Shown: piece by piece, positions 16,676-64,000 of the stretch
Layout of the letters: each line of letters begins with the position of its first letter
How positions within the stretch are numbered: the stretch's first letter is position 1
NCBI GenBank assembly: GCA_002269645.1
Contig: NIVC01000230.1
Span: forward strand, 372,001-436,000
Origin: Macrostomum lignano
Taxonomy: Eukaryota
Length of the DNA: 64,000 nt
Reading direction: 5' to 3'
Translations under genes and position numbers: made by a program
Notes under the pieces: generated by a model
What the model was told of the DNA's origin: nothing
What the model saw: only the letters and a program-made list of their open reading frames with translations
Databases searched by the model: none

Positions 16676-17143
16676 TCAGTTGAACAGCAGGCGCCCGGAC
16701 ACCAGCAGGGCAGTCAGGAGCGCTGTCAGCATTGAAGCTTCAACCGACCGACTGGCTGCATTGCAAAAGTCTTTGCTGCACCGGCAGTAGGTCGCGCGGA
16801 CGCCCTTCGAGCCGACCCGATCGTAGCAGGAGTCCTCGGCGCTGTCGCCCTCCTCAACACTGGCCTTGCCGCCACAGTGCCGCACCACCACGTTGGTGTC
16901 GCCGACCTCCTGTCGCTGAGTCCAGCACACCTGAGCGTCTGGCACCGGAGGCCGCCTATTCTTGCCGAGCTGACGGCCGACAGCGCAGTCGGCCTTCAAA
17001 TCGTCTGGCGGATTTTGCAGACAGTCAGGCTCGGTCAGGCTGTCGCAAATGTAGCAGCTCAGGCCCGATGCCGGGGTCAGGAGGCTGGCGACGGCGACCA
17101 GGGAGCAGACGGTGAACAACAGGGAGTTCGGCTGGAGCAGCAT
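16676..17143 (-). CDS. Quiver/Sleepless-like Ly6/uPAR (three-finger) protein, probably GPI-anchored, 155 aa, single coding exon
   Basis: N-terminal signal peptide, then LSCYIC. Ten cysteines ending in YCRCSKDFCN. Hydrophobic C-terminal tail. A CCCGCAG acceptor lies 12 nt upstream of the ATG. Confidence 0.85.
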   Translation of the reverse strand: MLLQPNSLLFTVCSLVAVASLLTPASGLSCYICDSLTEPDCLQNPPDDLKADCAVGRQLGKNRRPPVPDAQVCWTQRQEVGDTNVVVRHCGGKASVEEGDSAEDSCYDRVGSKGVRATYCRCSKDFCNAASRSVEASMLTALLTALLVSGRLLFN

Positions 17144-20774: not shown

Positions 20775-22737
20775 CAATTCTCAATGGGAGATTCTCAATG
20801 GGGAGATTCTCAATGGGAGATTCTCAATGGGGAGATTCTCAATGGGGAGATTCTCAATGGGAGATTCTCAATGGGAGATTCTCAATGGGGAGATTCTCAA
20901 TGGGAGATTCTCAATGGGGAGATTCTCAATGGGAGATTCTCAATGGGGAGATTCTCAATGGGAGATTCTCAATGGGGAGATTCTCAATGGGAGATTCTCA
21001 ATGGGGAGATTCTCAATGGGAGATTCTCAATGGGGAGATTCTCAATGGGGAGATTCTCAATGGGAGATTCTCAATGGGAGATTCTCAATGGGGAGATTTT
21101 CAATGGGAGATTCTCAATGGGGAGATTCTCAATGGGAGATTCTCAATGGGAGATTCTCAATGGGGAGATTCTCAATGGGAGATTCTCAATGGGGAGATTC
21201 TCAATGGGAGATTCTCAATGGGGAGATTCTCAATGGGAGATTCTCAATGGGGAGATTCTCAATGGGAGATTCTCAATGGGAGATTCTCAATGGGAGATTC
21301 TCAATGGGAGATTCTCAATGGGAGATTCTCAATGGGAGATTCTCAATGAGAGATTTGAAGGGAGATTCTCAATGGGAGATTCTCATTGAGAGATTTGAAG
21401 GGAGATTCTCAATGGGAGATTCTCAATGAGAGATTTGAAGGGAGATTCTCAATGAGAGATTTGAAGGGAGATTCTCAATGAGAGATTTGAAGGGAGATTC
21501 TCAATGAGAGATTTGAAGGGAGATTCTCAATGAGAGATTTGAAGGGAGATTCTCAATGAGAGATTTGAAGGGAGATTCTCAATGAGAGATTTGAAGGGAG
21601 ATTCTCAATGAGAGATTTGAAGGGAGATTCTCAATGAGAGATTTGAAGGGAGATTCTCAATGAGAGATTTGAAGGGAGATTCTCAATGAGAGATTTGAAG
21701 GGAGATTCTCAATGAGAGATTTGAAGGGAGATTCTCAATGAGAGATTTGAAGGGAGATTCTCAATGAGAGATTTGAAGGGAGATTCTCAATGAGAGATTT
21801 GAAGGGAGATTCTCAATGAGAGATTTGAAGGGAGATTCTCAATGAGAGATTTGAAGGGAGATTCTCAATGAGAGATTTGAAGGGAGATTCTCAATGAGAG
21901 ATTTGAAGGGAGATTCTCAATGAGAGATTTGAAGGGAGATTCTCAATGAGAGATTTGAAGGGAGATTCTCAATGAGAGATTTGAAGGGAGATTCTCAGTG
22001 AGAGATTTGAAGGGAGATTCTCAATGGGGAGATTCTCAATGGGAGATTTCATGGGAGATTCTCAATGAGAGATTTGAAGGGAGATTCTCAATGAGAGATT
22101 TGAAGGGAGATTCTCAATGAGAGATTTGAAGGGAGATTCTCAATGAGAGATTTGAAGGGAGATTCTCAATGAGAGATTTGAAGGGAGATTCTCAATGAGA
22201 GATTTGAAGGGAGATTCTCAATGAGAGATTTGAAGGGAGATTCTCAATGAGAGATTTGAAGGGAGATTCTCAATGAGAGATTTGAAGGGAGATTCTCAAT
22301 GAGAGATTTGAAGGGAGATTCTCAATGAGAGATTTGAAGGGAGATTCTCAATGAGAGATTTGAAGGGAGATTCTCAATGAGAGATTTGAAGGGAGATTCT
22401 CAGTGAGAGATTTGAAGGGAGATTCTCAATGGGGAGATTCTCAATGGGAGATTTCATGGGAGATTCTCAATGAGAGATTTGAAGGGAGATTCTCAATGAG
22501 AGATTTGAAGGGAGATTCTCAATGAGAGATTTGAAGGGAGATTCTCAATGAGAGATTTGAAGGGAGATTCTCAATGAGAGATTTGAAGGGAGATTCTCAA
22601 TGAGAGATTTGAAGGGAGATTCTCAATGAGAGATTTGAAGGGAGATTCTCAATGAGAGATTTGAAGGGAGATTCTCAATGAGAGATTTGAAGGGAGATTC
22701 TCAATGAGAGATTTGAAGGGAGATTCTCAATGAGAGA
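20775..22737. repeat. Compound satellite: 14/15-bp unit changing to a 26-bp unit at about 21345
   Basis: G(G)GAGATTCTCAAT units, then GAGAGATTTGAAGGGAGATTCTCAAT units. Confidence 0.95.
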
Positions 22738-22815
22738 TATCTTAAACTGCAATAGCAATACTATAAAAATTTCTACCACGTAGAAGAAAAGCAAAAAGCT
22801 CCTGCCAAATGGAAA

Positions 22816-25800
22816 TCAAAGATCGTGAAATATTTGCATAGCCATAATCTCTCCAGTGCTCATAGTTTGAGTAGCCACCGACGCGGTGCTGGCGGAGACC
22901 AGACTGGCGCACTGGGAGCACAGCTCCGACGCCGTCTCGGAAGCTGCGTCCGGCTGTTTGACTTCAGGCTGATAGGCAGACGGCTGACCCCCGATCAGTT
23001 TCAAATTGGCGACATTGTCGGCCAGGTTGTCTTCGAGATCGAAGTCGGCGCCGAACTCGCCGATCTCGGCCGGGTCGGAGGAACCGCCGCTGCTCACCGA
23101 CCAGCCGTCGCGCTGGTTGTCGATGTCAGACAGGAATTTCACGTCGTCGGCCAGATCGAGGAGGGTGGCGGCGGAGGATCTCGGCTGTTGGGACGGCGGG
23201 ACAGCGGAGGAGGCTGGGCGCTCCATCAGAGCTTGGTCAGACTCGCGCCACACCTGGGTGGCCCGCCATTTTGCACGGCTGTCCTTGGTGGCCAAGATGG
23301 CGTTGAAGTAGACGGTGTCGTTCACCTGGGAGGTAGGTGGGTTGGGGACTGAGCATGACTGCTGTGTGAGGCTGGACTGTTCGATGGCTGTCAGCCCGAG
23401 GATCTGGGAGGCCGGCACAGCAACTGAGGATCTGGGAGGCTGGCCCAGCAACTGAGGATCTGAGAGGCTGGCCCAGCAACTGGGGATCTGGGAGGCTGGC
23501 CCAGCAACTGGGGATCTGAGAGGCTGGCCCAGCAACTGGGGATCTGGGAGGCTGGCCCAGCAACTGAGGATCTGGGAGGCTGGCCCAGCAACTGAGGATC
23601 TGGGAGGCTGGCCCAGCAACTGAGGATCTGGGAGACTGGCCCAGCAACTGACACTCTGAGAGGCTGGCCCAGCAACTGGGGATCTGGGAGGCTGGCCCAG
23701 CAACTGGGGATCTGAGAGGCTGGCCCAGCAACTGAGGTTCTGGGAGACTGGCCCAGCAACTGAGGATCTGAGAGGCTGGCCCAGCAACTGAGGATCTGGG
23801 AGACTGGCCCAGCAACTGAGGATCTGAGAGGCTGGCCCAGCAACTGACACTCTGAGAGGCTGGCCCAGCAACTGAGGATCTGAGAGGCTGGCCCAGCAAC
23901 TGAGGATCTGGGAGACTGGCCCAGCAACTGGGGATCTGGGAGGCTGGCCCAGCAACTGAGGATCTGGGAGGCTGGCCCAGCAACTGAGAATCTGGGAGGC
24001 TGGCCCAGCAACTGGGGATCTGGGAGGCTGGCCCAGCAACTGAGGATCTGGGAGGCTGGCCCAGCAACTGAGAATCTGGGAGGCTGGCCCAGCAACTGGG
24101 GATCTGGGAGGCTGGCCCAGCAACTGGGGATCTGGGAGGCTGGCCCAGCAACTGAGGATCTGGGAGACTGGCCCAGCAACTGAGGATCTGGGAGGCTGGC
24201 CTAAGCAACTGGGGATCTGGGAGGCTGGCCTAAGCAACTGAGGATCTGGGAGACTGGCCCAGCAACTGAGGATCTGGGAGGCTGGCCCAGCAACTGAGGA
24301 TCTGGGAGACTGGCCCAGAGGATTCGAGCGCCAGCCCTTACCTTAAAATACTTCTGCAGGTCGTCCACGTGTTTAAAAATAGACCGATCAAAGAAAACGT
24401 GTTCGTGCCGACCCAGGTCGATGATGCCCCACAGCTTGGCGCAGTGGAACACGCGGCCTCGGCGGTTGGACAGCGAGCGAGGCGGCGGCGGATCGGCAGT
24501 TGTCGACGACGAGGACTGGCTGCTGAGCCGCAGACTGCGTCGCTGAAATTCGTTGCGCCCGAAAGCCGAACCATTCGAAACCATGGCGTCCGGCCCGGTC
24601 GAGTTTAGGTTGAACAGGCGGGGCCGCTTTCTAAGAAATTCCTCCAATTCGAGCTGCGTCCAGCCGATGAAGTTGCGGGCGGCCTCGGCGGAGTCGCCCG
24701 ACCTGCGGCGATTTTTCATATGGGCGATTTTCTATTTATATAGGCGATTTTCTATTTATATAGGCGATTTTCAATTTATATAGGCGATATTCTATTTATA
24801 TAGGCGATTTTCTACATATATTGGCTATTTTCTACATATTGGCTATTTTCTACATATATAGGCGATTTTCTATTTATATAGGCGATTTTCTACATATATA
24901 GGCGATTTTATATTTATATAGGCGATTTTCTATTTATATAGGCGATTTTCTATTTATATAGGCGATTTTCTATTTATATAGGCGATTTTCTATTTATATA
25001 GGCGATTTTCTATTTATATAGGCGATTTTCTACATATATAGGCGATTTTCTATTTATATAGGCGATTTTCTATTTATATAGGCGATTTTCTATTTATATA
25101 GGCGATTTTATATTTATATAGGCGATTTTCTACATATATAGGCGATTTTCTATTTATATAGGCGATTTTCTATTTATATAGGCGATTTTCTATTTATATA
25201 GGCGATTTTATATTTATATAGGCGATTTTCTATTTTTTATATTTATACGTGGATTTCCGGAAGGCTTTTGACTCGGTGGCCAGGCTAGCGATTGCATGGC
25301 TGCTGTCCTACTACGGCGTCCCCCCTGCACTGGTGGCTGCGGTGATGGATCTGTACAGCGATTCCAGGGCATTTGTTCAGTCGAGCGACGGCCCCACTGA
25401 TGAGTTCAGCACAAGCTCTGGCGTCCTTCAGGGCGACACGCTGGCTCCTCTGCTTTTCATCATGGTCGTGGACTACGTGCTGCGCCGGTCTCTCCATGAT
25501 GACGACGGCTATGTGCTAGTCCCACGTCGAAGCTCCCGACACCCTGCAGTCCCGCTGCCGGCTCTTGCGTATGCAGACGACATCGCACTCCTCTGTCGCG
25601 ATCCAGCTGCTGCCCAACGCGCTCTCTTAAGACTCTGCGAGGAGGGCGCTCGGGTTGGACTGATGATCAACGCACTGAAGACAGAAGTGCTGCACGTGGG
25701 CACTGATACCGCCCCGGCACTAGATCTGCCCAACGGAGACGCCATCGCGGTGTGCGAGGACTTTCGGTACCTCGGCTCCCTGGTGATGAGTCCCGACTCC

Positions 25801-28800
25801 ATCGTCTCCGACAGAAGGAATCAGGCCTGGCGTGCGGCGCACCTTCTCAGGAACGTCTTCAACTCTGCTGCAAGAGACAGCCTGAAGGTGCGCCTCTTCC
25901 GCGCTGCCGTTGAGCCTATCCTTCTGTACGGCATGGAAGCAGTGCCGATGACCGCCACGCGAGAGAAAGCCCTGGACGCGCTGTACAGGTCCCTGCTGCG
26001 CCACGCCCTGGGCGTGCACTACCCGGAGAGGCTGCCGTCCAGAGACCTGATGGTTCGCGCCGGCGTCCCAGCCCTGAGCGTCACCCTGCGCCGGCGCCGC
26101 CAGATGCTGCTGGGCCACTGTCTGAGGAGCCACGGTCGCGGCGAGCGAAACCCGCTTGCGCTGGTCCTCCTGCACCAACCGACCGAGCGGCTGCGCCGCG
26201 GCCAAGGAAGAACTGTGACGCTAATTACCACTCTGTTGGCTGACTTGCAGGCTATCGGACTTGATCCCCAGTCCGCCATGGCCTGCCCCTCCCGACTGTT
26301 CTGCGAGCGCGTGCGCGCAAAAGCTATCTAACTTTTTGCGTCTATATATATATATATAGGCGATTTTCTACATATATAGGCGATTTTCTATTTATATAGG
26401 CGATTTTATATTTATATAGGCGATTTTCTATTTATATAGGCGATTTTCTATTTATATAGGCGATTTTATATTTATATAGGCGATTTTCTACATATATAGG
26501 CGATTTTCTATTTATATAGGCGATTTTCTATTTATATAGGCGATTTTCTATTTATATAGGCGATTTTCTATTTATATAGGCGATTTTATATTTATATAGG
26601 CGATTTTCTATTTATATAGGCGATTTTCTACATTTATAGGCGATTTTATATTTATATAGGCGATTTTCTATTTATATAGGCGATTTTATATTTATATAGG
26701 CGATTTTATATTTATATAGGCGATTTTCTACATATATAGGCGATTTTCTATTTATATAGGCGATTTTCTATTTATATAGGCGATTTTATATTTATATAGG
26801 CGATTTTATATTCATATAGGCGATTTTCTATTTATATAGGCGATTTTCTACATATATAGGCGATTTTCTATTTATATAGGCGATTTTCTATTCATATAGA
26901 CGATTTTATATTTATATAGCGTTCAAATTTGTACACACACAGACAGAGTTTTGATTTTTATAGGTAGAGAGAGGCGATTTTCGTTTTATATAGGCGATTT
27001 TCTATTTATTTAGGCGATTTTCTATTTATATAGGCGATGTTCGTTTTATATAGGCGATTTTATATTTATATAGGCGATTTTATATTTATATAGGCGGTTT
27101 TATATTTATATAGGCGGTTTTATATTTATATAGGCGGTTTTATATTTATATAGGCGGTTTTATATTTATATAGGCGGTTTTATATTTATATAGGCGATTT
27201 TTTATATTTATATAGGCGGTTTTATATTTATATAGGCGGTTTTATATTATTATAGGCGATTTTTATATTTATATGGGCGAAATTCTATTTATATAGGCGA
27301 TATTGTACATATATAGGCGATTTTCTTTTTATATAGGCGATTTTTATATTTATATAGGCGATTTTCTACATATACAGGCGATTTTCTTTTTATATAGGCG
27401 ATTTTCTATTCATAGAGGCGATTTTCTACATATACGCGATTTCTACATATATGGCGATTTTCCACACGCAATCCTCTAGGGCTGCACAGACGACACTCTA
27501 CAGTCTCCAGTTCCCCAACCAACCTGGATATCACAGCGAACAGCTGCGCCAGTGGCAGCCCGCCGCCAGTCCTAGTTGCCGCTCTGTCCAGAACTCGCCT
27601 AACAAATTCCACGGCCTTGAACTCGGCTGCTGGCATTGACGCTGAGCAGGCTGTCGAGCTCACGCTACCAGTATCATCGAACGCTTCGTCGTTATAATTC
27701 GATTCGGCAGGCGTCCCCGGCAGCGAGTTGGCGAATGTGTCGTCCATGCTGCCGCCAAGAAAACCGCCGCCGCCGCCGCCTTGCGCCCGACCGGATTTCG
27801 ACAGCATACTGCGGGGTCGGCTGGTGCGAGCGGAGTGCGTGTGACGCAATCTGGAACCGGATGAAGAAGACAATGACTGCTGCTGCTGCTGGGACTGCTT
27901 CTCCTGCTGCCTGGTTGTCACGGCAGCGAACGTGTCCCGCAGGCCAACCAGTTCGCCTTGGATTTCAAACACGTGCCGATGCTTGGCTAGAAATTTAGCG
28001 AAATCTGACTGCGGCCCCACTACTGAACGAACTTCGGCCGGGGCCTGGCTGAGGTGGCCGGCCAGACTCTTTATTGGCACCCAGCGGTCCTCGCGGCGGC
28101 GGCCGAGGCGGCTCTGCGAAGTTGAAAGAGAGAAGAAATGATAAAAAATTGCCTTGCATAAAACGTCATAAAACGAGATATCACGGCACAAGTTCGTCGC
28201 CTAAAAATTCGTCAAAGAGTCGCTCTAGGGGAAATTTGAAGCGTTTTATTGTTTGAGCTATAGCCATGGGCCCTCTGAGGTAATGGCTATTGTTCGCTAG
28301 GCATATCTAACTTTAAGGTAAAAAAAAGTCAGTGAGAAATGCCCATTTTGCCTCTCCGGTGCTGAGAATGCACAGAACTTCACCTGCAATTGCTTTGCTT
28401 TTACTCGGGAGAGGCTGGCCTACACTTCAGCCAAGTCTCCGGATCTTTCCGACGTTTTCAGGCTTGAGAATCTCGGCTAGCTCGTCCGCTACCTAAGGGC
28501 TACCGGGTGAGAGACGCCAGGGATCAGCGGACTGGGCGACGACGCCCCCCCCCCCTGCATCCGGATGCGTGGAGCCCCCCTGCAGCTGAGTTACGCAGGG
28601 AGAATTGAATGCTGATGAGGAATGGCAGATGCTGAGTTGCCAGGAATACTCAGAAGCACTCTGTTCTCCCTCATCCCTAATCTAACCTCACGCACTCTGC
28701 TCTCCCACATCCCTAATCTAACCTCACGCACTCTGCTCTCCTTCATCCCTAATCTAATCTCAATCACTCTGCTCTCCCACATCCCTAATCTAACCTCACG

Positions 28801-29795
28801 CACTCTGCTCTCCCTCATCCCTAATCTAACCTCACGCAGTCTGCTCTCCCACATCCCTAATCTAACCTCACGCACTCTGTTCTCCCTCATCCCTAATCTA
28901 ACCTCACGCAGTCTGCTCTCCCACATCCCTAATCTAACCTCACGCACTCTGCTCTCCCTCATCCCTAATCTAACCTCACGCAGTCTGCTCTCCCACATCC
29001 CTAATCTAACCTCACGCACTCTGTTCTCCCTCATCCCTAATCTAACCTCATGTACTCTGCTCTCCCACATCCCTAATCTAACCTCACGCACTCTGTTCTC
29101 CCTCATCCCTAATCTAACCTCATGCACTCTGCTCTCCCTCATCCCTAATCTAATCTCATGCACCCTGCTCTCCCCTATCCAGTATAATCTCAGACACTCT
29201 TGCGTGATGTACGAGATTCATTAAGGCAAATCTCTATCGATCATTCATTCACACACTTTTTGGTTTCACAAATGAGTGCAACAATTACTAAAATACAATT
29301 AAGTGCTAGGCACACCTGAAAGAATCTGACAGCTTCGCTCTCCCTAGCAACCTCCATCATAACGCTGGCGGACAGAGTTGATGACGAGCAGGAGGACATT
29401 GATAGCCTATCGAAACCATTGGTCAACTCGCCGCTGTCAGCAGATCCAGCACCTGGCGGTGAATTGGACTGCGGTGGCACTGAAGAGGGCACCTCGGGAT
29501 TGCTCTGATTGAGTCGATGATCAGTGTCAAGTCCAGCTGGCCCAACGCTGCCTACTGCAGATGCCATATCGTCATGGAGCCGGAATAGGGCTGGGTGCCG
29601 CTGTAGAAAAGCTCGCATGCCGCCAGCCTGGTCAATTGCTGTTGCGGCTTCTGCACCACCGCCTGGTCTGTGTAAAAGTTTCTGAGTTAGAACAGGCAAT
29701 GGCAGTCCGCGTGGGGGCGCATTCATCAGCAGCTCTAGAAGGTGTAACATGGCCCGATGCTGCGGTGACCCATTTGTGTCAAATGAACTCAGCAT
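22816..29795 (-). CDS. Egalitarian-like RNA-binding protein (three Egl-type winged-helix repeats, cold-shock/OB-like domain, C-terminal TQT motif), 4 exons, about 646 aa
   Basis: Exons 29795-29316, 28113-27524, 24702-24342 and 23325-22816 have GT-AG sites and consistent phases (1941 nt). VPIKSLAGHLSQAPAEVRSVVG...FAKFLAKHRHVF resembles my recollection of Drosophila Egl repeat 2. GGMRAFLQRHPALF resembles repeat 1. GRVFHCAKLWGIIDLGRHEHVFFDRSIF...VYFNA...KWRATQVW is CSD-like. The start codon is uncertain. Confidence 0.8.
23395..24318. repeat. 28-bp minisatellite, about 33 copies (Egl-like intron 3)
   Basis: Unit GCTGGCCCAGCAACTGAGGATCTGGGAG. Confidence 0.95.
24712..27460. repeat. 20-bp AT-rich minisatellite (Egl-like intron 2), split by a LINE insertion
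   Basis: Unit GGCGATTTTCTATTTATATA on both sides of 25248-26358. Confidence 0.93.
25248..26358 (+). mobile_element. 5'-truncated non-LTR retrotransposon (RTE-group-like RT) with a (TA)n tail
   Basis: Open frame 25249-26331 carries VDFRKAFDSV, GVLQGDTLAP, LAYADDIAL, FRYLGS and LLYGMEA. The stop is followed by an 11-nt 3' UTR and (TA)8. The clade assignment is tentative. Confidence 0.88.
28660..29170. repeat. 36-bp minisatellite with alternating variants (Egl-like intron 1)
   Basis: Unit CCCTAATCTAACCTCACGCACTCTGCTCTCCC(A/T)CAT. Confidence 0.93.
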
Positions 29796-32084
29796 AGTAG
29801 TGAGGAGTTTAGGCTGACCCAATAAGCAGCATGCAATAAAAGTGTTTTTTTAGTATTGACATTTGTAATATTAGTCAAAATAATTCAAATAACTACAATG
29901 AATTATAAATAAGCAAAAATTACTCAATCTAGTTTGTCATTTTAATCCATCAACCTATTAATTTAACAATTATAAACTAAATTTATTAAATTAGCTTATT
30001 TTCTTAATAAATCTAAATCTTTGAGCATTTAAAGTTGAAAGAATATTTTATATAGAGTCTTGATAAGGAATATTTTCCCTAAATTTTGACACTTATATGT
30101 TAAATCATACTTACTAGGTTTTTTATGCCAAATGGTTGCTATGGCATCTTAAAATTTTATTTGGCACCCTGAATTTGGACCCATAGTGCCAAAATGGCAC
30201 CACAAATTTTTAAGCCTAGTGCCAAAAAAATTAATGTATTTTTATGATACAGATGAAATCATTGAAGTGAAGTATATGTAGCTATGTAGGTATTGTCTTA
30301 TCTCAACTCTTGTATATGAAAAAATGAGGAAAGGATGAAGGTTGCTCAATAACTTTTTTTGGTATTGACAATAAGCAGGTCTTATATAGCTAAATGAGTA
30401 AGCAATATAAAAAACTAAGTTTTTATTATGGTCCCATTTATGAATATGGACTGAATGGACATTTCTGCGAAGTGCGAATTAAGACAAATCCGCCAAATTT
30501 ATATCGATTTAATAATTACAATTATCAGCAAATTCTATTCCATACCATCTCTAGGCAATCGCAAAATATTGTTTTGCTTGCTAGGCTATTATTTATTATT
30601 TTGTCCCTAACTATTCCAGAGGTTGGAATTGTCTAGAAATGCAAATGAAATATATTATTATTATTATTGTATCGAACTACGACTGTAACGTACTAAACAC
30701 TGATGAAATGTTAGTGTCTAATAAAATTTTCGACGCTTTGTGCTAAAACAGTAAAATAATATACTTTAGCCATCAAAGTGTTAAAAGAAAATTTAACGTT
30801 GAAATATGATGAAAATATTCTATTAAACGTAATGAGTCACGTCGAGACAAGGAGCTAATCTGGACTGAATCAGTTGATCAACAACCCAAGAAAATCGATA
30901 TTTCCCTTCTATTTTGAATTGAATAACTATTCATTCGCACATTTACTTTTTATGGTACCAGTTGTGATGTAGGAACACTTTTAGAACTTTAATTTTAAGA
31001 AAAGAAAATAAGAACCAATTGACCGAATTTAGGCATGACAATAGACTAGTTAACTAGTATTCAATGGCCTGTTGAGTGAGTATAAAAAACAGTACACAGT
31101 AAATAGGATAGTCTATCCTGCATGGTACCATTTCTATGTGCTTATGGTTCAGCAACTTGGCTATATTTCTTGTTCTTACCATTGCCTTGTGACTGCAATC
31201 AACTGGCAGCAGTATAGACTATAATTGGCTACCTAAAATACAGATAATGCCTATTAGATCGGCTAGTTTCTGCTTGATAACTCAGTTTGTCCTTCATAAA
31301 GCTAGTGGCCTAGGCTGCATTAGTTGACTAGCTAGTGGCCTGGATTCCATTCCATTTATGTCTTCCAAAATTGTCTGAACCAGTCATTGATTCAGTTAGA
31401 GCAAATAGTAAAAAAGGAAAAGCATTTAAATAGCATTTAATAGCATGTGCAAATTTAAATGTCAAGTTCTTTGCATAAAGTTAAATGCTTTTTACCTGCA
31501 AAAGGCCCTGGATATAAAGGTTCTTTTTTCAAGCACACTGGAAAGCCTTATATTTTTGTTCTTATGCAGTGTCCCAATAATGTTTGAGTATTGATTTGGT
31601 TGCCACAAACCATGGCATATGATAGTTGTGCATAAGCTGCCTTGCTTTTAGATAGTTAAGGCAATAATGTGGATCTGATGGCTATGGCTCCCTGATAGAT
31701 TAGCCATCTTAGTATTGATTATTGCCTTTCCTCTTAGATGTATCCTTGACCTTGGCTAGCCTGCATAGGCTGATTGGTCCTAGCCATCAAGACTAAAAAT
31801 GCTATGAATGGAAGAGTTGTTAGCATTAAAAGAGATATTAGACAAGGAATTAATTATTTTATGAATATCTGATTTCAGTATGAAGTAAAATTCAATGAAT
31901 GGGTTTCATTAAGTGGCTTTGTGATAATGGCTATAATGTCTACCATTTCAAATCTGCACTTGTCTATAATTCTATATTTGTGTTTCATTTAAAAAGCAAT
32001 GGGTTTATGGTCACTAGTCTCTTACTATTTGACTGGCCAGGCTGAGGTGTTGACTTTGTTATTGTCTACTTTTTGTTGTTGCTG

Positions 32085-33660
32085 TGTGTATGTGTATGTG
32101 TGTGTGTGTGTGTATGTGTATTGTGTATATGCCACCGGTGCAGTCTAATATTCTGCGAATCTGGTAAGGAACCAATTCCAGTAAGCAAGCGCGCTTGGCT
32201 CCTTGGCCCACAAGTCGGTGGCGTTGCCAATACCGAGCTGCTGCCTGCACGTCCAGGTGGCTGGGCAGTCACAGAGGTGGTCGACCATTTCCGGCTCCAG
32301 TTTGCAGGCCCGACACAGCCTATCGTCGGCGCGTCTGATGTGCAGGTTGTAAGCTTGAAGTTGGATTGAGTGGCTGGAGCGGAAGTGGCGCAGGCTCAGC
32401 GCTTTGGTACGATTTCCGAAGCTCGCTCGCTGCACCTTGGCTTCCCTGCCGTAGGTCTTGTGGCTCTGGTCGTGCGTGAACCTTCTCGGTAGTTGCCTCT
32501 GGAGGACTCTACTCATGATGCTGGCGCCAACCGGCATGTTGTCCTGTGGCATGGCTGCGGCTTCACCAGCTGCCTTAGCTGCTTCATTTCCGGGGAGGCC
32601 GCAGTGAGCTGGTATCCAGATCATAGCCACCTTGCGGCTGCACTCCCCGAGGTGTGCCAGCAGGTGCCGGATTTTAATGGCGGCCGGCATCCGGGATTCG
32701 CCTGTGATGGCTTGCAGCGCGCTGCGGCTGTCAGTGGCTATATGGGCATGGTGCCATGGTTTGTCCAGTTTGCACAGCCAGTCAATAGCCGCCAGCAGGG
32801 CGACTAGCTCGGCAGCGGTTGAGGAGCAGGGCTGCCCCGCTGGAATGGGCAGTGTGGTGATATTGTCAGAGAGTGCAACAGTGAGTGGCGGCGTGACCTT
32901 GTCAATGAGGATGCCAGCCCCTCCGCTGCCATCTTTGAGAACTGCTCCGTCGGTGTAAATGATGAAATCCGGTTGTGAGATAACATCAAGCAGGCGGGAC
33001 CTCGCGAGCGCGCAATTGGCCTCAGTGGTCTCTGCCCTTTCTGCTTCGGCTTGGATAGAGGCATACATGCGCAACTGCTGGCCGACCTGGCCGATCTGGC
33101 CACCGTAAATTGTGGTGGACCAGGGGTAAGTCGCAAAAATTCCCAGCCTGAAGAATACAGACATAGTACTAATTAGATGACGAGGCATTTATACCTTATA
33201 AGACAGTCATAGTTACTCCTGCCGTTTACCCAAAATTGCGTTAGGGTTTATTTTACAGGTAAGTCACATTTTTGGTCAAAAAGTAAGTCGCATGGCCAGT
33301 GTAAATCAGGGGGGTTGCGCATGTATGGATAGGGGCGAACTGCCACTTGCGCCAAGGCGGGATGGGTGGGGCGTTGGGCAGCCAGTTTTTGTGCAGCAGC
33401 CCTTCCTCCTCCAACAGTTTCCGCGCCTGGATCCTCTAGCCAGTTCTACGGAGCCATTGACAGAGCGTCTGCCTGGCAATGTAACCACGGTGCGACTGTT
33501 CCGGCTTGCGGAGCCAGCGATCTAGCTTTGCTGCCCATGTGAGACGGCACAGGATCTCAAGCTCAGGGAGCTCCGCTTCGCACATGAGGGCATTGACCAG
33601 CGTAGTGGCTAGGAGACCTGTGATAATGCGGCAGGTGTGGCGCTGCAGTGTGTTGTTGCT
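32085..33660 (-). mobile_element. Degenerate 5'-truncated I-group LINE (connection domain, RNase H, Cys/His knuckle) with a (CA)n tail
   Basis: LQRHTCRIITGLLATTLVNALMCEAELP, then IYTDGAV, STAAELVAL, TDSRSAL, WIPAHCGLPGNE and CRACKLEPEMVDHLCDCP. In-frame TAG near 33437 and a 147-bp insertion. The last RNase H Asp is missing. Confidence 0.85.
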
Positions 33661-49714: not shown

Positions 49715-50025
49715 ATGAGAAGAGTGATAAGAGAGTAGCTGAGTAATAAGAGAGTGGCTGAGTGATAAAAAAACAGATAGAGTGAAAAGAGAGAGTGTGG
49801 CTGAGTGATAAGAGAGGGCAGAGTGATAAGAGAGGCAGAATGATAAGAGAGGGCGAGTGATAAGAGAGTGGCTGAGTGATAAGAAAGCGAGACAGAGTGA
49901 TAAGAAAGCGAGACAGAGTGATAAGAGAGGCAGAGTGATAAGAGAGAGACTGGCTGAGTGATAAGAAAGACAGGCAGAGTGACAAGAGAGTGGCTCAGTG
50001 ATAAGAAAGACAGACAGAGTGATAA
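49715..50025. repeat. Degenerate GAGTGATAAGAGAG minisatellite
   Basis: Direct reading of the sequence. Confidence 0.85.
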
Positions 50026-50389
50026 GAGCCGGTAGGAATGCGATAGGGAGATACCTGTGCAGATCCAGAGGCAGAGGCAATGACCTCTCAGTGCCAAGCT
50101 TAACAATAGCATGGTTGTACTGTGTCCCAGTTTTCCCTTCGGTTCTTATTGGTCCTAACCTGACTCCTCTCTTGCTAATGCTTTGCCTTGTCTCACCGGC
50201 CGGGGCGCAAAGCTATTTAGTGCAGAGTTAAGCTGGAGCTACGAGCTATGTTAAGTCTGACTCTCAGCTTCTATACTCTGGCTTAGTTATACAGTAGCAT
50301 TCAACTCGGTTCTGTGAGGACATGGAGCTACATTAGCCATGCCAGATACCTGCACTAAGTAAGTCTTCAGCATCCTTAACCTCCTTTTT

Positions 50390-58980
<8,591 letters not shown>

Positions 58981-59451
58981 ATTCGCTTCTCATTATTAAC
59001 TTTAATCTCCCCCGTATTCTCAGATCCCCCATCATTTTTGCTTCAGTCTCATCAATGCCAGAAATCTGTCAATCAAACGCTATTGACGCTTCCGGCTTGT
59101 AGCATAACGTATAAAAATCCCATCTGACCATTGCGGAAGAGCCAATGCCAACAATTTGAGCCGTCTGCGTGTGCACAGTTCCCGCCAGCTGCTGGGATCA
59201 TTTGGGCTGCAATGCGGAAAAGAATCAGCACCATATTTGCGTACATAATTGGGCTGTTTAGCATGCAGCAATTGATAAATATGCTAACATAGTGGCTAAT
59301 AATAATACAATCTATTGTCAATCTTCATTGTCATGTGGTCGGCTCTGATGTAGTAGTTCTCCTAAGTCCTCCTCACTCAATCTGCGTTGCTTTCCCCCTA
59401 CATGTAATTCTCTGATCTTACGCTGATTTTACGCCATTTCCCAGAGTTCTT

Positions 59452-62400
59452 CTCCCTTCTCCCCTGTCACCAATTCTCCCGTGTCACCAATTCTCCTCTG
59501 TCATCAATTCTCCCCTGTCACCAATTCTCCCCTGTCACCAATTCTCCCCTGTCACCAATTCTCCCGTGTCACCAATTCTCCTCTGTCACCAATTCTCCCC
59601 TGTCACCAATTCTCCCCTGTCACCAATTCTCCTCTGTCACCAATTCTCCTCTGTTACCAATTCTCCCCTGTCACCAATTCTCCCCTGTCACCAATTCTCC
59701 TCTGTTACCAATTCTCCCCTGTCACCAATTCTCCCCTGTCACCAATTTTCCCCTGTCACCAATTCTCCCCTGTCACCAATTCTCCCCTGTCACCAATTCT
59801 CCCCTGTCACCAATTCTCCCCTGTCACCAATTTTCCCCTGTCACCAATTCTCCTCTGTCACCAATTCTCCCCTGTCACCAATTCTCCCCTGTCACCAATT
59901 CTCCTCTTTCAACAATTCTCCTCTGTCACCAATTCTCCCCTGTCACCAATTCTCCTCTGTCACCAATTCTCCTCTGTCACCAATTCTCCCCTGTCACCAA
60001 TTCTCCTCTGTCACCAATTCTCCCCTGTCACCAATTCTCCCCTGTCACCAATTCTCCTCTTTCAACAATTCTCCTCTGTCACCAATTCTCCCCTGTCACC
60101 AATTCTCCTCTTTCACCAATTCTCCCCTGTCACCAATTCTCCTCTGTTACCAATTCTCCCCTGTCACCAATTCTCCCCTGTCACCAATTCTCCTCTTTCA
60201 CCAATTCTCCTCTGTCACCAATTCTCCCCTGTCACCAATTCCCCCTGTCAGCAATTCCCCCTGTCACCAATTCTCCCCTGTCACCAATTCTCCTCTGTTA
60301 CCAATTCTCCCCTGTCACCAATTCTCCCCTGTCACCAATTCTCCCCTGTCACCAATTCTCCTCTTTCACCAATTCTCCTCTGTCACCAATTCTCCCCTGT
60401 CACCAATTCTCCCCTGTCACCAATTCTCCTCTTTCAAAAATTCTCCTCTGTTACCAATTCTCCCCTGTCACCAATTCTCCCCTGTCACCAATTCTCCTCT
60501 GTTACCAATTCTCCCCTGTCACCAATTCTCCCCTGTCACCAATTCTCCTCTGTTACCAATTCTCCCCTGTCACCAATTCTCCCCTGTCACCAATTTTCCC
60601 CTGTCACCAATTCTCCCCTGTCACCAATTCTCCCCTGTCACCAATTCTCCCCTGTCACCAATTCTCCCCTGTCACCAATTTTCCCCTGTCACCAATTCTC
60701 CTCTGTCACCAATTCTCCCCTGTCACCAATTCTCCCCTGTCACCAATTCTCCTCTTTCACAATTCTCCTCTGTCACCAATTCTCCCCTGTCACCAATTCT
60801 CCCCTGTCACCAATTCTCCTCTTTCACCAATTCTCCCCTGTCACCAATTCTCCTCTGTTACCAATTCTCCCCTGTCACCAATTCTCCCCTGTCACCAATT
60901 CTCCTCTTTCACCAATTCTCCTCTGTCACCAATTCTCCCCTGTCACCAATTCCCCCTGTCACCAATTCTCCTCTTTCACCAATTCTCCCCTGTCACCAAT
61001 TCTCCTCTGTTACCAATTCTCCCTGTCACCAATTCTCCCCTGTCACCAATTCTCCCCTGTCACCAATTCTCCTCTTTCACTAATTCTCCTCTGTCACCAA
61101 TTCTCCCCTGTCACCAATTCTCCCCTGTCACCAATTCTCCTCTTTCAACAATTCTCCTCTGTCACCAATTCTCCCCTGTCACCAATTCTCCCCTGTCACC
61201 AATTCTCCTCTTTCACCAATTCTCCCCTGTCACCAATTCTCCTCTGTTACCAATTCTCCCCTGTCACCAATTCTCCCCTGTCACCAATTCTCCTCTTTCA
61301 CCAATTCTCCTCTGTCACCAATTCTCCCCTGTCACCAATTCCCCCTGTCAGCAATTCCCCCTGTCACCAATTCTCCCCTGTCACCAATTCTCCTCTGTTA
61401 CCAATTCTCCCCTGTCACCAATTCTCCTCTGTCACCAATTCTCCTCTTTCACCAATTCTCCTGTGTCACCAATTCTCCCCTGTCACCAATTCTCCTCTGT
61501 CACCAATTCTCCCCTGTCACCAATTCTCCTGTCACCAATTCTCCTCTTCACCAATTCTCCCCTGTCACCAATTCTCCCCTGTCACCAATTCTCCCCTGTC
61601 ACAATTCTCCCCTGTCACCAATTCTCCCCTGTCACCAATTCTCCTCTGTTACCAATTCTCCCCTGTCACCAATTCCCCCTGTCACCAATTCTCCCCTGTC
61701 ACCAATTCTCCTCTGTCACCAATTCTCCCCTGTCACCAATTCTCCCCTGTCACCAATTCTCCTCTGTCACCAATTCTCCCTGTTACCAATTCTCCCCTGT
61801 CACCAATTCTCCCTGTCACCAATTCTCCTCTGTTACCAATTCTCCCTGTCACCAATTCTCCCCTGTCACCAATTCCCCTGTCACCAATTCTCCCCTGTCA
61901 CCAATTCTCCCCTGTCACCAATTCTCCCTGTCACCAATTCTCCCTGTCACCAATTTTCCCCTGTCACCAATTCTCCTCTGTCACCAATTCTCCCCTGTCA
62001 CCAATTCTCCCCTGTCACCAATTCTCCTCTTCACAATTCTCCTCTGTCACCAATTCTCCCCTGTCACCAATTCTCCTCTGTCACCAATTCTCCTCTGTCA
62101 CCAATTCTCCCTGTCACCAATTCTCCTCTGTCACCAATTCTCCTGTCACCAATTCTCCCCTGTCACCAATTCTCCTCTTCAACAATTCTCCTCTGTCACC
62201 AATTCTCCCCTGTCACCAATTCTCCTCTTTCACCAATTCTCCCCTGTCACCAATTCTCCTCTGTTACCAATTCTCCCCTGTCACCAATTCTCCCCTGTCA
62301 CCAATTCTCCTCTTTCACCAATTCTCCTCTGTCACCAATTCTCCCCTGTCACCAATTCCCCCTGTCAGCAATTCCCCCTGTCACCAATTCTCCCCTGTCA

Positions 62401-63735
62401 CCAATTCTCCTCTGTTACCAATTCTCCCCTGTCACCAATTCTCCCTGTCACCAATTCTCCCCTGTCACCAATTCTCCTCTTTCACCAATTCTCCTCTGTC
62501 ACCAATTCTCCCTGTCACCAATTCTCCCTGTCACCAATTCTCCTCTTTCAAAAATTCTCCTCTGTACCAATTCTCCCCTGTCACCAATTCTCCCCTGTCA
62601 CCAATTCTCCTCTGTTACCAATTCTCCCCTGTCACCAATTCTCCCCTGTCACCAATTCTCTCTGTTACCAATTCTCCCCTGTCACCAATTCTCCCTGTCA
62701 CAACTAATTCTCCTCTGTCACCAATTCTCCCCTGTCACCAATTCTCCCCTGTCACCAATTCTCCTCTTTCAACAATTCTCCTCTGTCACCAATTCTCCCC
62801 TGTCACCAATTCTCCCCTGTCACCAATTCTCCTCTTTCACCAATTCTCCCCTGTCACCAATTCTCCTCTGTTACCAATTCTCCCCTGTCACCAATTCTCC
62901 CCTGTCACCAATTCTCCTCTTTCACCAATTCTCCTCTGTCACCAATTCTCCCCTGTCACCAATTCCCCCTGTCAGCAATTCCCCCTGTCACCAATTCTCC
63001 CCTGTCACCAATTCTCCTCTGTTACCAATTCTCCCCTGTCACCAATTCTCCTCTGTCACCAATTCTCCTCTTTCACCAATTCTCCTGTGTCACCAATTCC
63101 CCTGTCACCAATTCTCCTCTGTCACCAATTCTCCCCTGTCACCAATTCTCCTCTGTCACCAATTCTCCTCTTTCACCAATTCTCCCCTGTCACCAATTCT
63201 CCCCTGTCACCAATTCTCCCCTGTCATCAATTCTCCCTGTCACCAATTCTCCCCTGTCACCAATTCTCCTCTGTTACCAATTCTCCCCTGTCACCAATTC
63301 CCCCTGTCACCAATTCTCCCCTGTCACCAATTCTCCTCTGTCACCAATTCTCCTCTGTCACCAATTCTCCTCTGTTACCAATTCTCCCCTGTCACCAATT
63401 CCCCCTGTCACCAATTCTCCCCTGTCACCAATTCTCCCCTGTCACCAATTCTCCTCTTTCACCAATTCTCCTCTGTTACCAATTCTCCCCTGTCACCAAT
63501 TCTCCTCTGTCACCAATTCTCCCCTGTCACCAATTCTCCTCTTTCACCAATTCTCCTCTGTCACCAATTCTCCCCTGTCACCAATTCTCCTCTGTCACCA
63601 ATTCTCCCCTGTCACCAATTCTCCTCTGTCACCAATTCTCCCCTGTCACCAATTCTCCCCTGTCACCAATTCTCCTCTTTCACCAATTCTCCTCTGTCAC
63701 AATCCTCCCGTGTCACCAAATCCCCCTGTCACCAA
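59452..63735. repeat. 17-bp satellite, about 250 copies
   Basis: Unit TGTCACCAATTCTCC(C/T)C. The 1443-aa ORF is a product of this periodicity. Confidence 0.97.
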
Positions 63736-63774
63736 ATATCGCGCCTGGATATTTGACATGCTGGAATTCATTAG

Positions 63775-64000
63775 CATCTATACCCTCGCCAACAAAGCCA
63801 TGCGGTTGCTAGGACCTCAGAGGACGAGCCGAGCCGCTCGATTCCCGAGCTGGAGCAGCCTGTCGCAGTCAGTCCGCTGACTCGCCTGACTCAAGGCTGC
63901 CACCCCAGGCGGCTGAAATTCCCAGCGGCGAACAGCTGCTCCAGGCAGTTGCTGCTGGTGCTGGTTCTGTTCCTCTACCTCGGCTTCGGGGCCGCCGTTT
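63775..64000 (+). CDS. Partial exon of a probable two-pore-domain (K2P/KCNK-like) potassium channel, running off the window
   Basis: TTAG acceptor at 63774 opens a frame ending ...QLLLVLVLFLYLGFGAAVF, typical of K2P TM1. The start codon is not resolved. Confidence 0.55.

What the first reader, a model, noticed from the sequence alone, without database searches (positions are those of the whole stretch)
22816..29795. Egalitarian-like protein lacking the exonuclease domain but carrying a cold-shock-like domain and a dynein light chain TQT motif
Seen: three repeats of the form EAV.FF...LP+..L....S......G....+..FL.+HP.+F, an OB/CSD-like segment (GRVFH..KLWGIIDLGRHEHVFFDRS...VYFNA...WRATQVW), and C-terminal SVATQTMSTG (TQT at 22864-22872). 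Known: Drosophila Egl links mRNA to BicD/dynein, has a 3'-5' exonuclease-like domain, and binds LC8 through an SQT-type motif. Inference: a different architecture of dynein mRNA adaptor in which a CSD-like fold replaces the exonuclease-like domain.
Basis: partly seen in the sequence, partly recalled or inferred. Interest (0 to 1): 0.7.

Follow-up and report, generated by a model that had tools for sequence, protein, structure and literature searches.

The report
Flatworm Egalitarian-like gene with cold-shock domain
This is an intact four-exon Macrostomum lignano gene of the recently described Egalitarian-like family: its ends match the fly mRNA-transport adaptor Egalitarian, but a cold-shock-type fold sits where the exonuclease-like module would be.

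Summary
On the minus strand, four GT-AG exons (29795-29316, 28113-27524, 24702-24342, 23325-22816) encode a 646-aa protein. It has three Egalitarian winged-helix domains (Pfam WH_Egal, E=4e-42). A 70-aa central domain is predicted with high confidence (pLDDT 93) as a five-stranded barrel; its closest solved folds are the DBC1 S1-like domain and the Unr, YB-1 and Lin28 cold-shock domains. The C-terminal motif is VATQTMSTGEIMAMQIF, and a family profile of it finds only one PDB sequence: the LC8 site of Drosophila Egl (ESQTLSTGDVVITKIF, holding S965 and S969). No exonuclease domain is present. The introns hold only satellites and a reverse-transcriptase fragment, and homologues lack the domain too.

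The organism is Macrostomum lignano. The architecture is not new. Planarian Egalitarian-like-1/2/3 was described in 2025 (PMC12579938), and that paper's sequence table includes a M. lignano paralogue of this gene.

What I add:
- The "central region" is a divergent cold-shock/S1-type OB fold.
- Relatives with three to six such stretches exist in chelicerates, a centipede and a priapulid.
- The RNA-reading residues of Egl domain 2 are invariant, while those of domain 1 are not.

A role as an LC8-dimerised, possibly BicD/dynein-linked, RNA adaptor is inferred, not shown.

The parts
29316..29795 (-). Exon 1 (aa 1-160): start codon, ED1, linker and first 8 residues of ED2; donor GT at 29315-29314
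   Evidence: N-terminus aligns with homologues' start (MxxDPxHKAMLYFLE)
27524..28113 (-). Exon 2 (aa 161-357, last codon split): rest of ED2, low-complexity linker, first half of ED3
   Evidence: the junction EAVRFFQ|SRLGRRREDRW matches paralogue P0002 without a gap
24342..24702 (-). Exon 3 (aa 357-477): second half of ED3, linker, first three strands of the cold-shock-like domain
   Evidence: junction confirmed by annotated protein P0001
22816..23325 (-). Exon 4 (aa 478-646 plus stop at 22816-22818): last two strands of the cold-shock-like domain, disordered acidic tail, C-terminal LC8-type motif
29568..29759 (-). ED1, first Egalitarian winged-helix domain (aa 13-76). It is the most divergent of the three: it lacks the F(T/S)xEMR motif and has Pro/Gln where Egl has His31/Cys35.
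   Evidence: Pfam WH_Egal, 3 stretches; alignment with Egl and EGAL-1
27934..29339 (-). ED2, second Egalitarian winged-helix domain (aa 153-220; coding parts 29316-29339 and 27934-28113, intron 1 between them). It keeps Egl Gly124, His125, Ser127, Gln128, Ala129 and Arg134.
   Evidence: best Pfam stretch 154-220; phmmer hit to Egl 99-163 in PDB 9rvy; invariant columns
24600..27627 (-). ED3, third Egalitarian winged-helix domain (aa 323-391; coding parts 27524-27627 and 24600-24702, intron 2 between them)
   Evidence: AlphaFold2 pLDDT about 90 with four helices and a two-strand wing; Foldseek hits to Egl chains 9rw3/9rw7/9rwb
23239..24464 (-). Cold-shock/S1-like OB-fold domain (aa 437-506; coding parts 24342-24464 and 23239-23325, intron 3 between them). 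It equals the 'central region' of planarian Egal proteins.
   Evidence: pLDDT 92.8, five strands; Foldseek to DBC1 S1-like, Unr, YBX1/2 and Lin28 CSDs, TM 0.6-0.75; family HMM hits Smed Egal-1 at 1e-24; 13 of 56 distant relatives match Pfam CSD, best 3e-10
22819..22890 (-). C-terminal motif STASVATQTMSTGEIMAMQIFHDL (aa 623-646), with TQT at 22864-22872. [quoted passage not shown]
   Evidence: conserved at the C-terminus of 59/60 members; the only PDB match of its profile is Egl 956-979, E=0.14; S965K+S969R abolish LC8 binding in Egl

Best explanation
The locus is an intact paralogue of the Egalitarian-like (Egal) gene family of Macrostomum lignano.

Shown:
- A 646-aa protein with three N-terminal Egl domains (LOTUS-like winged helices).
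- One central cold-shock/S1-type OB fold where Egl carries its exonuclease-homology plus XAD module.
- A long disordered tail.
- A terminal (T/C/S)QTxSTG motif homologous to the LC8 site of Egl.

Inferred mechanism, by analogy with Egl:
- LC8 binds the terminal TQT strand and dimerises the protein.
- ED2, whose minor-groove residues are invariant, docks on double-stranded RNA.
- The cold-shock-like barrel supplies a second contact, probably to single-stranded RNA, in place of ExoHD-XAD.
- ED1 may recruit BicD and so dynein, giving microtubule-based RNA localisation.

My confidence in family membership and architecture is about 0.95. My confidence that it is an LC8-dimerised RNA-binding protein is about 0.6. 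My confidence that it couples RNA to BicD/dynein is about 0.4.
For: - Gene model with canonical splice sites and no frame breaks.
- WH_Egal x3, E=4e-42. Egl is the only PDB sequence hit.
- About 190 homologues of 550-650 aa in flatworms, nemerteans, annelids, molluscs and a brachiopod share the same order of parts.
- The OB fold is predicted at pLDDT 93 and matches S1-like and cold-shock domains. Relatives of the same domain reach Pfam CSD at 3e-10 and carry YGFI/VYF motifs.
- The C-terminal profile hits only Egl 956-979, which holds the residues mutated in egl-dlc2pt.
- In Egl, Dlc binding drives dimerisation and RNA binding.
- ED2 residues Gly124/Ser127/Gln128, which contact the RNA minor groove in the Egl-BicD-RNA structures, are invariant here.
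- Planarian Egal-1 has the same architecture, and its RNAi gives the same phenotype (ectopic notum at posterior-facing wounds) as microtubule destabilisation.
Against: - Nothing here tests binding to LC8, BicD or RNA.
- ED1 is the BicD-binding and RNA-reading domain of Egl. It is the least conserved domain in this paralogue, with Egl His31->Pro and Cys35->Gln.
- Position +2 after the TQT anchor is Met, not the favoured Pro/Asp/Glu. Many TQT peptides do not bind LC8.
- Most family members have CQT rather than TQT.
- The protein itself does not reach Pfam CSD or S1-like at E<=1, and only part of the classical RNP1/RNP2 aromatic set is kept (KLWGII, HVFFD).
- LC8 is a general dimerisation hub, so an LC8 site does not imply dynein transport.
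Confidence: 0.6

Rival explanations
1. It is an LC8-dimerised RNA-binding regulator that is not a motor adaptor. LOTUS-like domains plus a cold-shock domain could act in RNP granules, translation control or RNA stability, possibly by binding a DEAD-box helicase as LOTUS domains of Oskar/TDRD do. There would be no BicD/dynein coupling.
For: - The Egl domains closely resemble LOTUS domains.
- Cold-shock domains of Unr, YB-1 and Lin28 are the closest folds, and those proteins are translational or stability regulators (my knowledge).
- ED1, the BicD-binding domain in Egl, is poorly conserved in this paralogue.
- LC8 binds many partners independently of dynein.
Against: - In non-flatworm members, ED1 is strikingly close to Egl and EGAL-1 ED1 (FTxEMRxxAGGxxxGLKKFLxxYPxxF).
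- Egal-1 knock-down in planarians gives the same ectopic-notum phenotype as microtubule poisons.
Confidence: 0.3
2. It is a decaying or non-functional duplicate: one of several M. lignano copies, sitting among satellites and retroelement debris, whose open frame survives only by chance.
For: - M. lignano has at least three further paralogues (P0002, P0013, P0003).
- ED1 is unusually divergent.
- The introns are filled with satellites and a reverse-transcriptase fragment.
- The N-terminus is unsettled, with a possible extra 5' exon out of frame with the nearest ATG.
Against: - 1941 nt are open across four exons with canonical splice sites.
- All 21 invariant positions of the cold-shock-like core, the invariant ED2 residues and the terminal motif are intact.
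- A near-identical copy is annotated in the public assembly.
Confidence: 0.05
3. An exonuclease-homology exon was missed, and the gene is really a canonical Egl orthologue.
For: Some sources name homologues 'exonuclease 3'-5' domain-containing protein 1'.
Against: - Three-frame translation of all introns and both flanks shows only satellites, a reverse-transcriptase fragment and AT-rich sequence full of stops.
- Neighbouring ORFs are RNase H, RVT and a Ly6/QVR gene.
- The exon junctions are gap-free against homologues.
- None of the 120 listed homologues carries PF01612; they include a transcriptome ORF and NCBI models.
- None of the 56 distant relatives of the central domain carries it either.
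Confidence: 0.02

Closest known systems
Schmidtea mediterranea Egalitarian-like-1/2/3 (Egal-1, dd_8302; Development 2025, PMC12579938)
   Same: - Same order of parts: three N-terminal Egl modules, a conserved central region of about 70 aa, and the C-terminal dynein-light-chain motif, with no exonuclease site.
- About 40% identity over 364 aa to Egal-1.
- The family HMM of the central domain hits Egal-1 at 1e-24 and Egal-3 at 4e-21.
- The M. lignano paralogue P0002 (Mlig021118.g1) is in that paper's Table S3.
   Different: - This is a different M. lignano paralogue (43-48% identical to P0002, by BLASTP and by alignment) with a more divergent ED1.
- The text I searched in that paper does not name the fold of the central region. 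No match for 'OB-fold' or 'barrel', and 'cold' occurs only in unrelated contexts.
[quoted passage not shown]
Drosophila Egalitarian (Egl) and C. elegans EGAL-1
   Same: - Three Egl domains at the N-terminus, with ED2 RNA-contact residues invariant.
- C-terminal xQTxSTG(D/E) LC8 site at the same relative position.
- Folded modules joined by long disordered linkers.
   Different: - The ExoHD and XAD modules, which complete the RNA pocket in Egl, are absent. One OB fold stands in their place.
- ED1 His31/Cys35 are not conserved.
- The protein is 646 aa, against 1004 aa for Egl.
Cold-shock and S1-like OB folds (Unr/CSDE1, YB-1/YBX2, Lin28, bacterial Csp; DBC1/CCAR2 S1-like domain)
   Same: - Five-stranded barrel with a short helix between strands 3 and 4.
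- TM-scores of 0.6-0.75 and rmsd of 2.6-3.4 A to these domains.
- KLWGII and HVFFD sit where RNP1 (KGFGFI) and RNP2 (VFVHF) lie (my alignment from memory of the Csp consensus; a lead only).
   Different: - No Pfam CSD or S1-like hit for this protein at E<=1.
- Sequence identity to the structural matches is 15-23%.
- Several aromatic and His RNA-stacking positions are replaced, while an invariant H-E-H triplet specific to this family is present.
Proteins with one to four WH_Egal stretches plus several cold-shock-like stretches, from chelicerates, a centipede and a priapulid (uncharacterised; e.g. Parasteatoda XP_015919574, Strigamia T1J227, Priapulus XP_014669431)
   Same: - N-terminal WH_Egal domains, the same OB-domain family (profile E down to 1e-27), and in the Priapulus, Strigamia and Parasteatoda proteins the same C-terminal (S/T)QTx(S/F)TG motif.
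   Different: - Three to six matched stretches of the OB profile instead of one, and lengths of about 850-1400 aa.
- Some copies are close enough to score on Pfam CSD.
LOTUS/OST-HTH domain proteins (Oskar, TDRD5/7, MARF1)
   Same: Winged helix-turn-helix modules of similar shape, used in RNP biology.
   Different: No significant sequence match. The Pfam hit is to WH_Egal, not to a LOTUS family, and no Tudor or NYN partners are present.

Membership tests
Egalitarian-like (Egal) family of Spiralia (PMC12579938) | N-terminal region of three Egl-type winged-helix modules | tested here: met
   Pfam WH_Egal E=4.2e-42, 3 stretches; 40% identity to Smed Egal-1 over 364 aa
Egalitarian-like (Egal) family of Spiralia (PMC12579938) | Conserved central region of about 70 aa shared by spiralian members | tested here: met
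   21 invariant positions in 26 members; the same HMM hits Smed Egal-1 (1e-24), Egal-3 (4e-21) and the Helobdella protein (2.5e-34)
Egalitarian-like (Egal) family of Spiralia (PMC12579938) | C-terminal dynein-light-chain-type motif | tested here: met
   VATQTMSTGEIMAMQIFHDL at the C-terminus; the motif is present in 59/60 members
Egalitarian-like (Egal) family of Spiralia (PMC12579938) | No recognisable 3'-5' exonuclease domain | tested here: met
   No PF01612 hit at E<=1; introns and flanks hold no candidate exon
Canonical Egalitarian (Drosophila Egl / C. elegans EGAL-1) | Three Egl domains, with the ED2 minor-groove residues Gly124, Ser127 and Gln128 | tested here: met
   Invariant columns in alignment A6; phmmer hit to Egl 99-163
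Canonical Egalitarian (Drosophila Egl / C. elegans EGAL-1) | ED1 base-reading residues His31 and Cys35 | tested here: not met
   Pro and Gln in this protein; Ser and Gly in the Lingula and Crassostrea sequences aligned
Canonical Egalitarian (Drosophila Egl / C. elegans EGAL-1) | Exonuclease-homology domain plus exonuclease-adjacent (XAD) helical domain | tested here: not met
   Absent from the protein, the locus and its homologues; the AlphaFold2 model shows only an OB barrel between ED3 and the tail
Canonical Egalitarian (Drosophila Egl / C. elegans EGAL-1) | C-terminal LC8-binding site (ESQTLSTG, S965/S969) | tested here: met
   At sequence level only: the profile of the family C-terminus finds Egl 956-979 as the sole PDB hit, E=0.14; the mutations are described. 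Binding itself was not testable.
Canonical Egalitarian (Drosophila Egl / C. elegans EGAL-1) | Binding of ED1 to the BicD C-terminal coiled coil, and RNA-dependent dynein activation | not testable with these tools
   No complex prediction or assay was available
Cold-shock domain / S1-like OB fold | Five-stranded antiparallel beta-barrel of about 70 residues | tested here: met
   AlphaFold2 pLDDT 92.8, strands 3-14, 18-24, 27-32, 51-58 and 67-74; Foldseek top hits are DBC1 S1-like, Unr, YBX and Lin28 CSDs, probability 1.0, TM 0.6-0.75. This is a prediction, not a solved structure.
Cold-shock domain / S1-like OB fold | Match to the Pfam CSD (PF00313) or S1-like (PF14444) profile | tested here: inconclusive
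   No hit for this protein at E<=1. Among 56 distant relatives found with the same domain profile, 13 match CSD (best 3.2e-10) and one matches S1-like at 2.9e-5.
Cold-shock domain / S1-like OB fold | RNP1/RNP2 aromatic nucleic-acid-binding motifs | tested here: inconclusive
   KLWGII and HVFFD keep one aromatic residue in each motif. Multi-domain relatives show YGFI and VYF. The comparison with the Csp consensus is from memory.
LC8 (dynein light chain) TQT-anchored linear motif | TQT anchor with at least five residues N-terminal to it, in a region that is not confidently folded | tested here: met
   TQT at aa 629-631; the preceding tail has pLDDT about 45-55; the criteria are
LC8 (dynein light chain) TQT-anchored linear motif | Favourable flanks (H-bonding residue at -4, strand breaker P/D/E at +2) | tested here: not met
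   Position -4 is Ser, which is acceptable. Position +2 is Met, and AlphaFold2 places a helix at P0001 residues 372-382, four residues after the anchor. Drosophila Egl, a proven binder, likewise has Leu at +2.

The most novel reading that the evidence does not exclude
The 'central region' of Egalitarian-like proteins is a true, highly derived cold-shock domain. 'Egl domains + cold-shock domain(s) + LC8 site' would then be an ancient protostome-wide architecture: one copy in Spiralia and three to six matched stretches in chelicerates, myriapods and priapulids. It would exist alongside, or be ancestral to, the exonuclease-bearing Egl of insects and nematodes. On this reading the Egl scaffold (dimerising LC8 tail plus dsRNA-reading EDs) is a platform onto which different third RNA-binding modules were grafted, and the spiralian version recognises localisation signals with a single-stranded element.
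Probability: 0.45. Interest if true: 0.5.

Novelty: new member of a known kind. Interest (0 to 1): 0.3.

Why it matters
Egl is the best-understood adaptor linking specific mRNAs to dynein, and no clear counterpart is known outside insects and nematodes. A family that keeps Egl's RNA-reading ED2 and its LC8 tail but swaps the exonuclease-like module for a cold-shock fold offers a natural experiment. It shows which parts of the machine are essential and how cargo specificity can be rewired. The one studied member, planarian Egal-1, controls head-versus-tail regeneration polarity. For this locus the practical gains are modest:
- a complete 646-aa model where the public annotation gives a truncated 384-aa protein;
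- a named fold for the central domain;
- the observation that related multi-cold-shock versions occur in Ecdysozoa.

Tried and rejected
- **Missed exonuclease exon.** Rejected after three-frame translation of the introns and flanks and Pfam scans of neighbouring ORFs.
- **Sequence search of the central domain against PDB.** Nothing significant: best E=0.23 to an unrelated hypothetical protein. Only fold comparison was informative.
- **Canonical Egl (EDs plus exonuclease) in Lophotrochozoa.** I searched with the scallop 'egalitarian protein homolog'. It returned five bivalve proteins of about 260 aa carrying the exonuclease domain only. The question of replacement versus paralogy stays open. 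I ran no further search on fly or worm Egl, because insect or nematode hits would have filled the list.
- **Deuterostome links.** The family HMM does not hit the sea-urchin or acorn-worm proteins listed in the planarian paper.
- **Egl sequence from the supplements of the structure paper.** Figures only, no text.
- **Pfam PF26288.** It is precomputed for some members but is not in the local Pfam copy, so I could not learn its name. It may be a model of this central domain.
- **An upstream exon.** The best candidate is at 31634-31663, but its frame and start codon could not be resolved.
Full report
**What is in the sequence.** The finding's span lies on the minus strand. ORF listing and direct reading of the DNA show four coding blocks. 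They join through canonical GT...AG introns into a 1941-nt reading frame: exons 29795-29316, 28113-27524, 24702-24342 and 23325-22816. The product has 646 residues. Its start (MLSSFDTNGSPQHRAMLHLLELLMN) aligns with the start of homologues, and the stop is at 22816-22818.

The three introns hold nothing protein-like on the gene's strand:
- Intron 1 carries a 36-bp satellite.
- Intron 2 carries two blocks of a 20-bp satellite around a reverse-transcriptase fragment on the opposite strand.
- Intron 3 carries a 28-bp satellite that is open in all frames. That satellite created the misleading 473-aa ORF in the mechanical list.

Each of ED2, ED3 and the central domain is split by one intron. The junctions are gap-free against relatives. 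Two of them are confirmed by the public protein P0001.

**Identity of the parts.** Pfam gives Egalitarian winged-helix domain (WH_Egal, PF23713) at E=4.2e-42 in three stretches, and nothing else above threshold. In the PDB the only sequence match is Drosophila Egalitarian in the 2026 Egl-BicD-RNA cryo-EM entries.

An AlphaFold2 model of the C-terminal 384 residues, built on 60 homologues, shows three things:
- a winged helix for ED3 (pLDDT about 90);
- a five-stranded barrel (pLDDT about 95);
- a disordered tail ending in a short helix.

The barrel modelled alone reaches pLDDT 92.8. Foldseek places it next to the S1-like domain of DBC1 and the cold-shock domains of Unr, YBX1/2 and Lin28B. It also matches bacterial Csp and S1 domains. 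TM-scores are 0.6-0.75 and rmsd is 2.6-3.4 A. Sequence alone does not reach these families for this protein. A profile of the domain was therefore run against 1.84 billion representative proteins, and it found more distant relatives. Among 56 of them, 46 also have WH_Egal, 13 match Pfam CSD (best E=3e-10) and none has an exonuclease domain. Their consensus shows YGFI and VYF, which are cold-shock hallmarks. I therefore read the central domain as a divergent cold-shock/S1-type OB fold.

**The C-terminal motif.** The last 20 residues are among the most conserved parts of the family. The motif (C/T)QTxSTG(D/E)(I/V)xATQ(L)(Y/F) closes 59 of 60 aligned members, by my reading of the listing (the script's stricter pattern matched 46). 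Most taxa have CQT, while the M. lignano copies with the motif, some other flatworms and a few further members have TQT.

A profile of this motif finds exactly one sequence in the PDB: Drosophila Egl 956-979, RVVKLVDAESQTLSTGDVVITKIF (E=0.14). That stretch contains Ser965 and Ser969, the two residues whose mutation (egl-dlc2pt) abolishes LC8 binding. In flies, Dlc binding serves mainly to dimerise Egl, and dimerisation in turn permits RNA and BicD binding.

The E-value is weak for a 31-column profile. Even so, the uniqueness of the hit, its position at the C-terminus and its coincidence with the mapped site make homology the sensible reading. A published analysis reached the same conclusion for the planarian proteins. 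Whether the motif binds LC8 here is not shown. A TQT anchor is predictive but not sufficient, and position +2 is Met rather than Pro/Asp/Glu. Egl itself, however, has Leu there.

**Organism and family.** The best database match is a hypothetical protein of Macrostomum lignano: P0001, 384 aa, effectively identical to residues 263-646. It is encoded 3.5 kb from the end of contig NIVC01001362.1, which explains its truncation. A Ly6/QVR gene lies downstream both there and in the window.

About 190 homologues were found, and the 120 listed all carry WH_Egal and none carries PF01612. The named ones come from flatworms, nemerteans, annelids, molluscs and a brachiopod. Most are 550-650 aa with the same order of parts. 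They include a transcriptome-derived complete ORF and NCBI models.

[quoted passage not shown] That paper defines Smed Egalitarian-like-1, -2 and -3 by four features:
- a three-module N-terminal domain shared with Egl;
- a conserved 67-71-aa central region found in spiralians;
- no clear exonuclease active site;
- a C-terminal motif 75% identical to the Egl dynein-light-chain site.

Its sequence table lists M. lignano Mlig021118.g1, which is my P0002, a paralogue of the present gene. My profile of the central domain hits Smed Egal-1 at 1e-24 and Egal-3 at 4e-21, and the present protein is about 40% identical to Egal-1. The locus is thus a further member of a known family. In the text I searched, the paper does not name the fold of the central region and limits it to Spiralia.

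**What goes beyond the paper.**
- The fold assignment given above.
- The same domain family occurs in three to six matched stretches, together with WH_Egal domains. Several of these proteins also end in the (S/T)QTx(S/F)TG motif. Named examples come from spiders, a tick, a horseshoe crab, a centipede and a priapulid. The cold-shock type is therefore not confined to Spiralia, and it exists in the same superphylum as exonuclease-type Egl. This favours old paralogy or repeated module exchange over a single spiralian swap. I could not settle it: a search seeded with a scallop 'egalitarian protein homolog' found only exonuclease-only proteins of about 260 aa.
- In an alignment with fly Egl and worm EGAL-1, the ED2 residues Gly124, Ser127 and Gln128 are invariant, as are His125, Ala129 and Arg134. 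The first three contact the RNA minor groove in the cryo-EM structures. In contrast, ED1 His31 and Cys35 are replaced. In this particular paralogue ED1 is the most divergent domain.

**How it most likely works.** What is shown is the architecture and the conservation pattern. The following steps are inferred:
- The terminal TQT strand binds an LC8 dimer and pairs two chains.
- ED2, and perhaps ED1, sits in the minor groove of structured RNA.
- The cold-shock-like barrel adds a contact that ExoHD-XAD provides in Egl, plausibly to single-stranded RNA.
- ED1 may engage BicD and thereby dynein.

The planarian phenotype (ectopic notum at posterior-facing wounds after egal-1 RNAi, and likewise after microtubule poisons) fits a microtubule-linked role but does not prove transport. 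The main rival is an LC8-dimerised RNA regulator with no motor link. A decaying duplicate and a missed exonuclease exon are unlikely for the reasons given in their entries.

**Verdict.** The function remains inferred, and novelty is low because the family and its architecture were published in 2025. The residual interest lies in three points: the cold-shock assignment, the ecdysozoan multi-domain relatives, and the split between conserved ED2 and divergent ED1.

Noticed in passing
window 31590-31710 (minus strand): A possible extra 5' exon. The minus-strand translation reads ...PSDPHYCLNYLKARQLMHNYHM..., resembling the SCLxYLKxRExFLYKMM stretch that precedes ED1 in P0002 and planarian Egal-1/2 (tblastn E=0.39; second-best hit in the window, collinear with the gene). 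An in-frame stop lies 6 codons upstream, and the nearest ATG (about 31705) is in another frame. The true N-terminus is therefore unsettled.
   Followed up: partly
window 23398-24318, 24718-25235, 26349-27462, 28656-29174, 20777-22738: The gene is embedded in satellites. A 28-bp array fills intron 3, a 20-bp array in two blocks fills intron 2, and a 36-bp array fills intron 1. A 26/118-bp array starts about 80 bp after the stop codon. Exon boundaries lie within a few dozen bases of the arrays.
   Followed up: partly
window 22816-24237 (minus strand): The 28-bp satellite of intron 3 has no stop codon in any of the three minus-strand frames. A mechanical ORF of 473 aa therefore runs from the satellite into exon 4. 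This ORF is an artefact, not a longer protein.
   Followed up: yes
window 25249-26331 (+), 32145-33188 (-), 52831-55032 (-): Retroelement remains. There is a reverse-transcriptase fragment inside intron 2 on the opposite strand (RVT_1, 1e-13), an RNase H ORF upstream of the gene (2e-10), and a 733-aa RVT_1 plus RNase H ORF further along.
   Followed up: partly
window 16676-17143 (-); L001 13482-13949: A Ly6/uPAR 'Quiver' family gene (QVR, 1.5e-10) lies 5.7 kb downstream of the Egal-like gene. The same neighbour follows the gene on public contig NIVC01001362.1 at 4.6 kb, so the two loci are syntenic copies with different repeat lengths.
   Followed up: partly
L001 3480-8876 (GCA_002269645.1, NIVC01001362.1): The public protein model of this gene (BOX15_Mlig014738g1, 384 aa) starts at Met263 of my model and lacks ED1 and ED2. 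The contig ends 3.5 kb upstream of the annotated gene.
   Followed up: partly
proteins P0151, P0165, P0170, P0172, P0177, P0198, P0216, P0219, P0247: Uncharacterised proteins of about 900-1400 aa from a priapulid, a centipede, spiders, a tick and a horseshoe crab combine WH_Egal domains with two to six matched stretches of the cold-shock-like profile. Several also end in the Egl-type QTxSTG motif. This architecture is not mentioned in the papers I read.
   Followed up: partly
proteins P0257-P0261: Bivalve proteins named 'egalitarian protein homolog' by NCBI are stand-alone 3'-5' exonuclease proteins of about 260 aa with no Egl domains. The name is misleading.
   Followed up: no
window 50000-52500 and 58000-64000: These stretches have very strong negative GC and AT skew, and they contain long ORFs with no Pfam match, including a 1443-aa ORF at 59481-63812. 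Repeated SQSPLLYSP-like peptides at 50961-52450 and 58267-58908 point to tandem repeats rather than genes there; nothing was checked beyond 58908.
   Followed up: no
proteins P0015, P0023, P0028, P0081 and others: Some family members carry a precomputed Pfam hit PF26288.1. That model is absent from the Pfam copy available here, so its name and position are unknown. It may be a model of the central domain.
   Followed up: no
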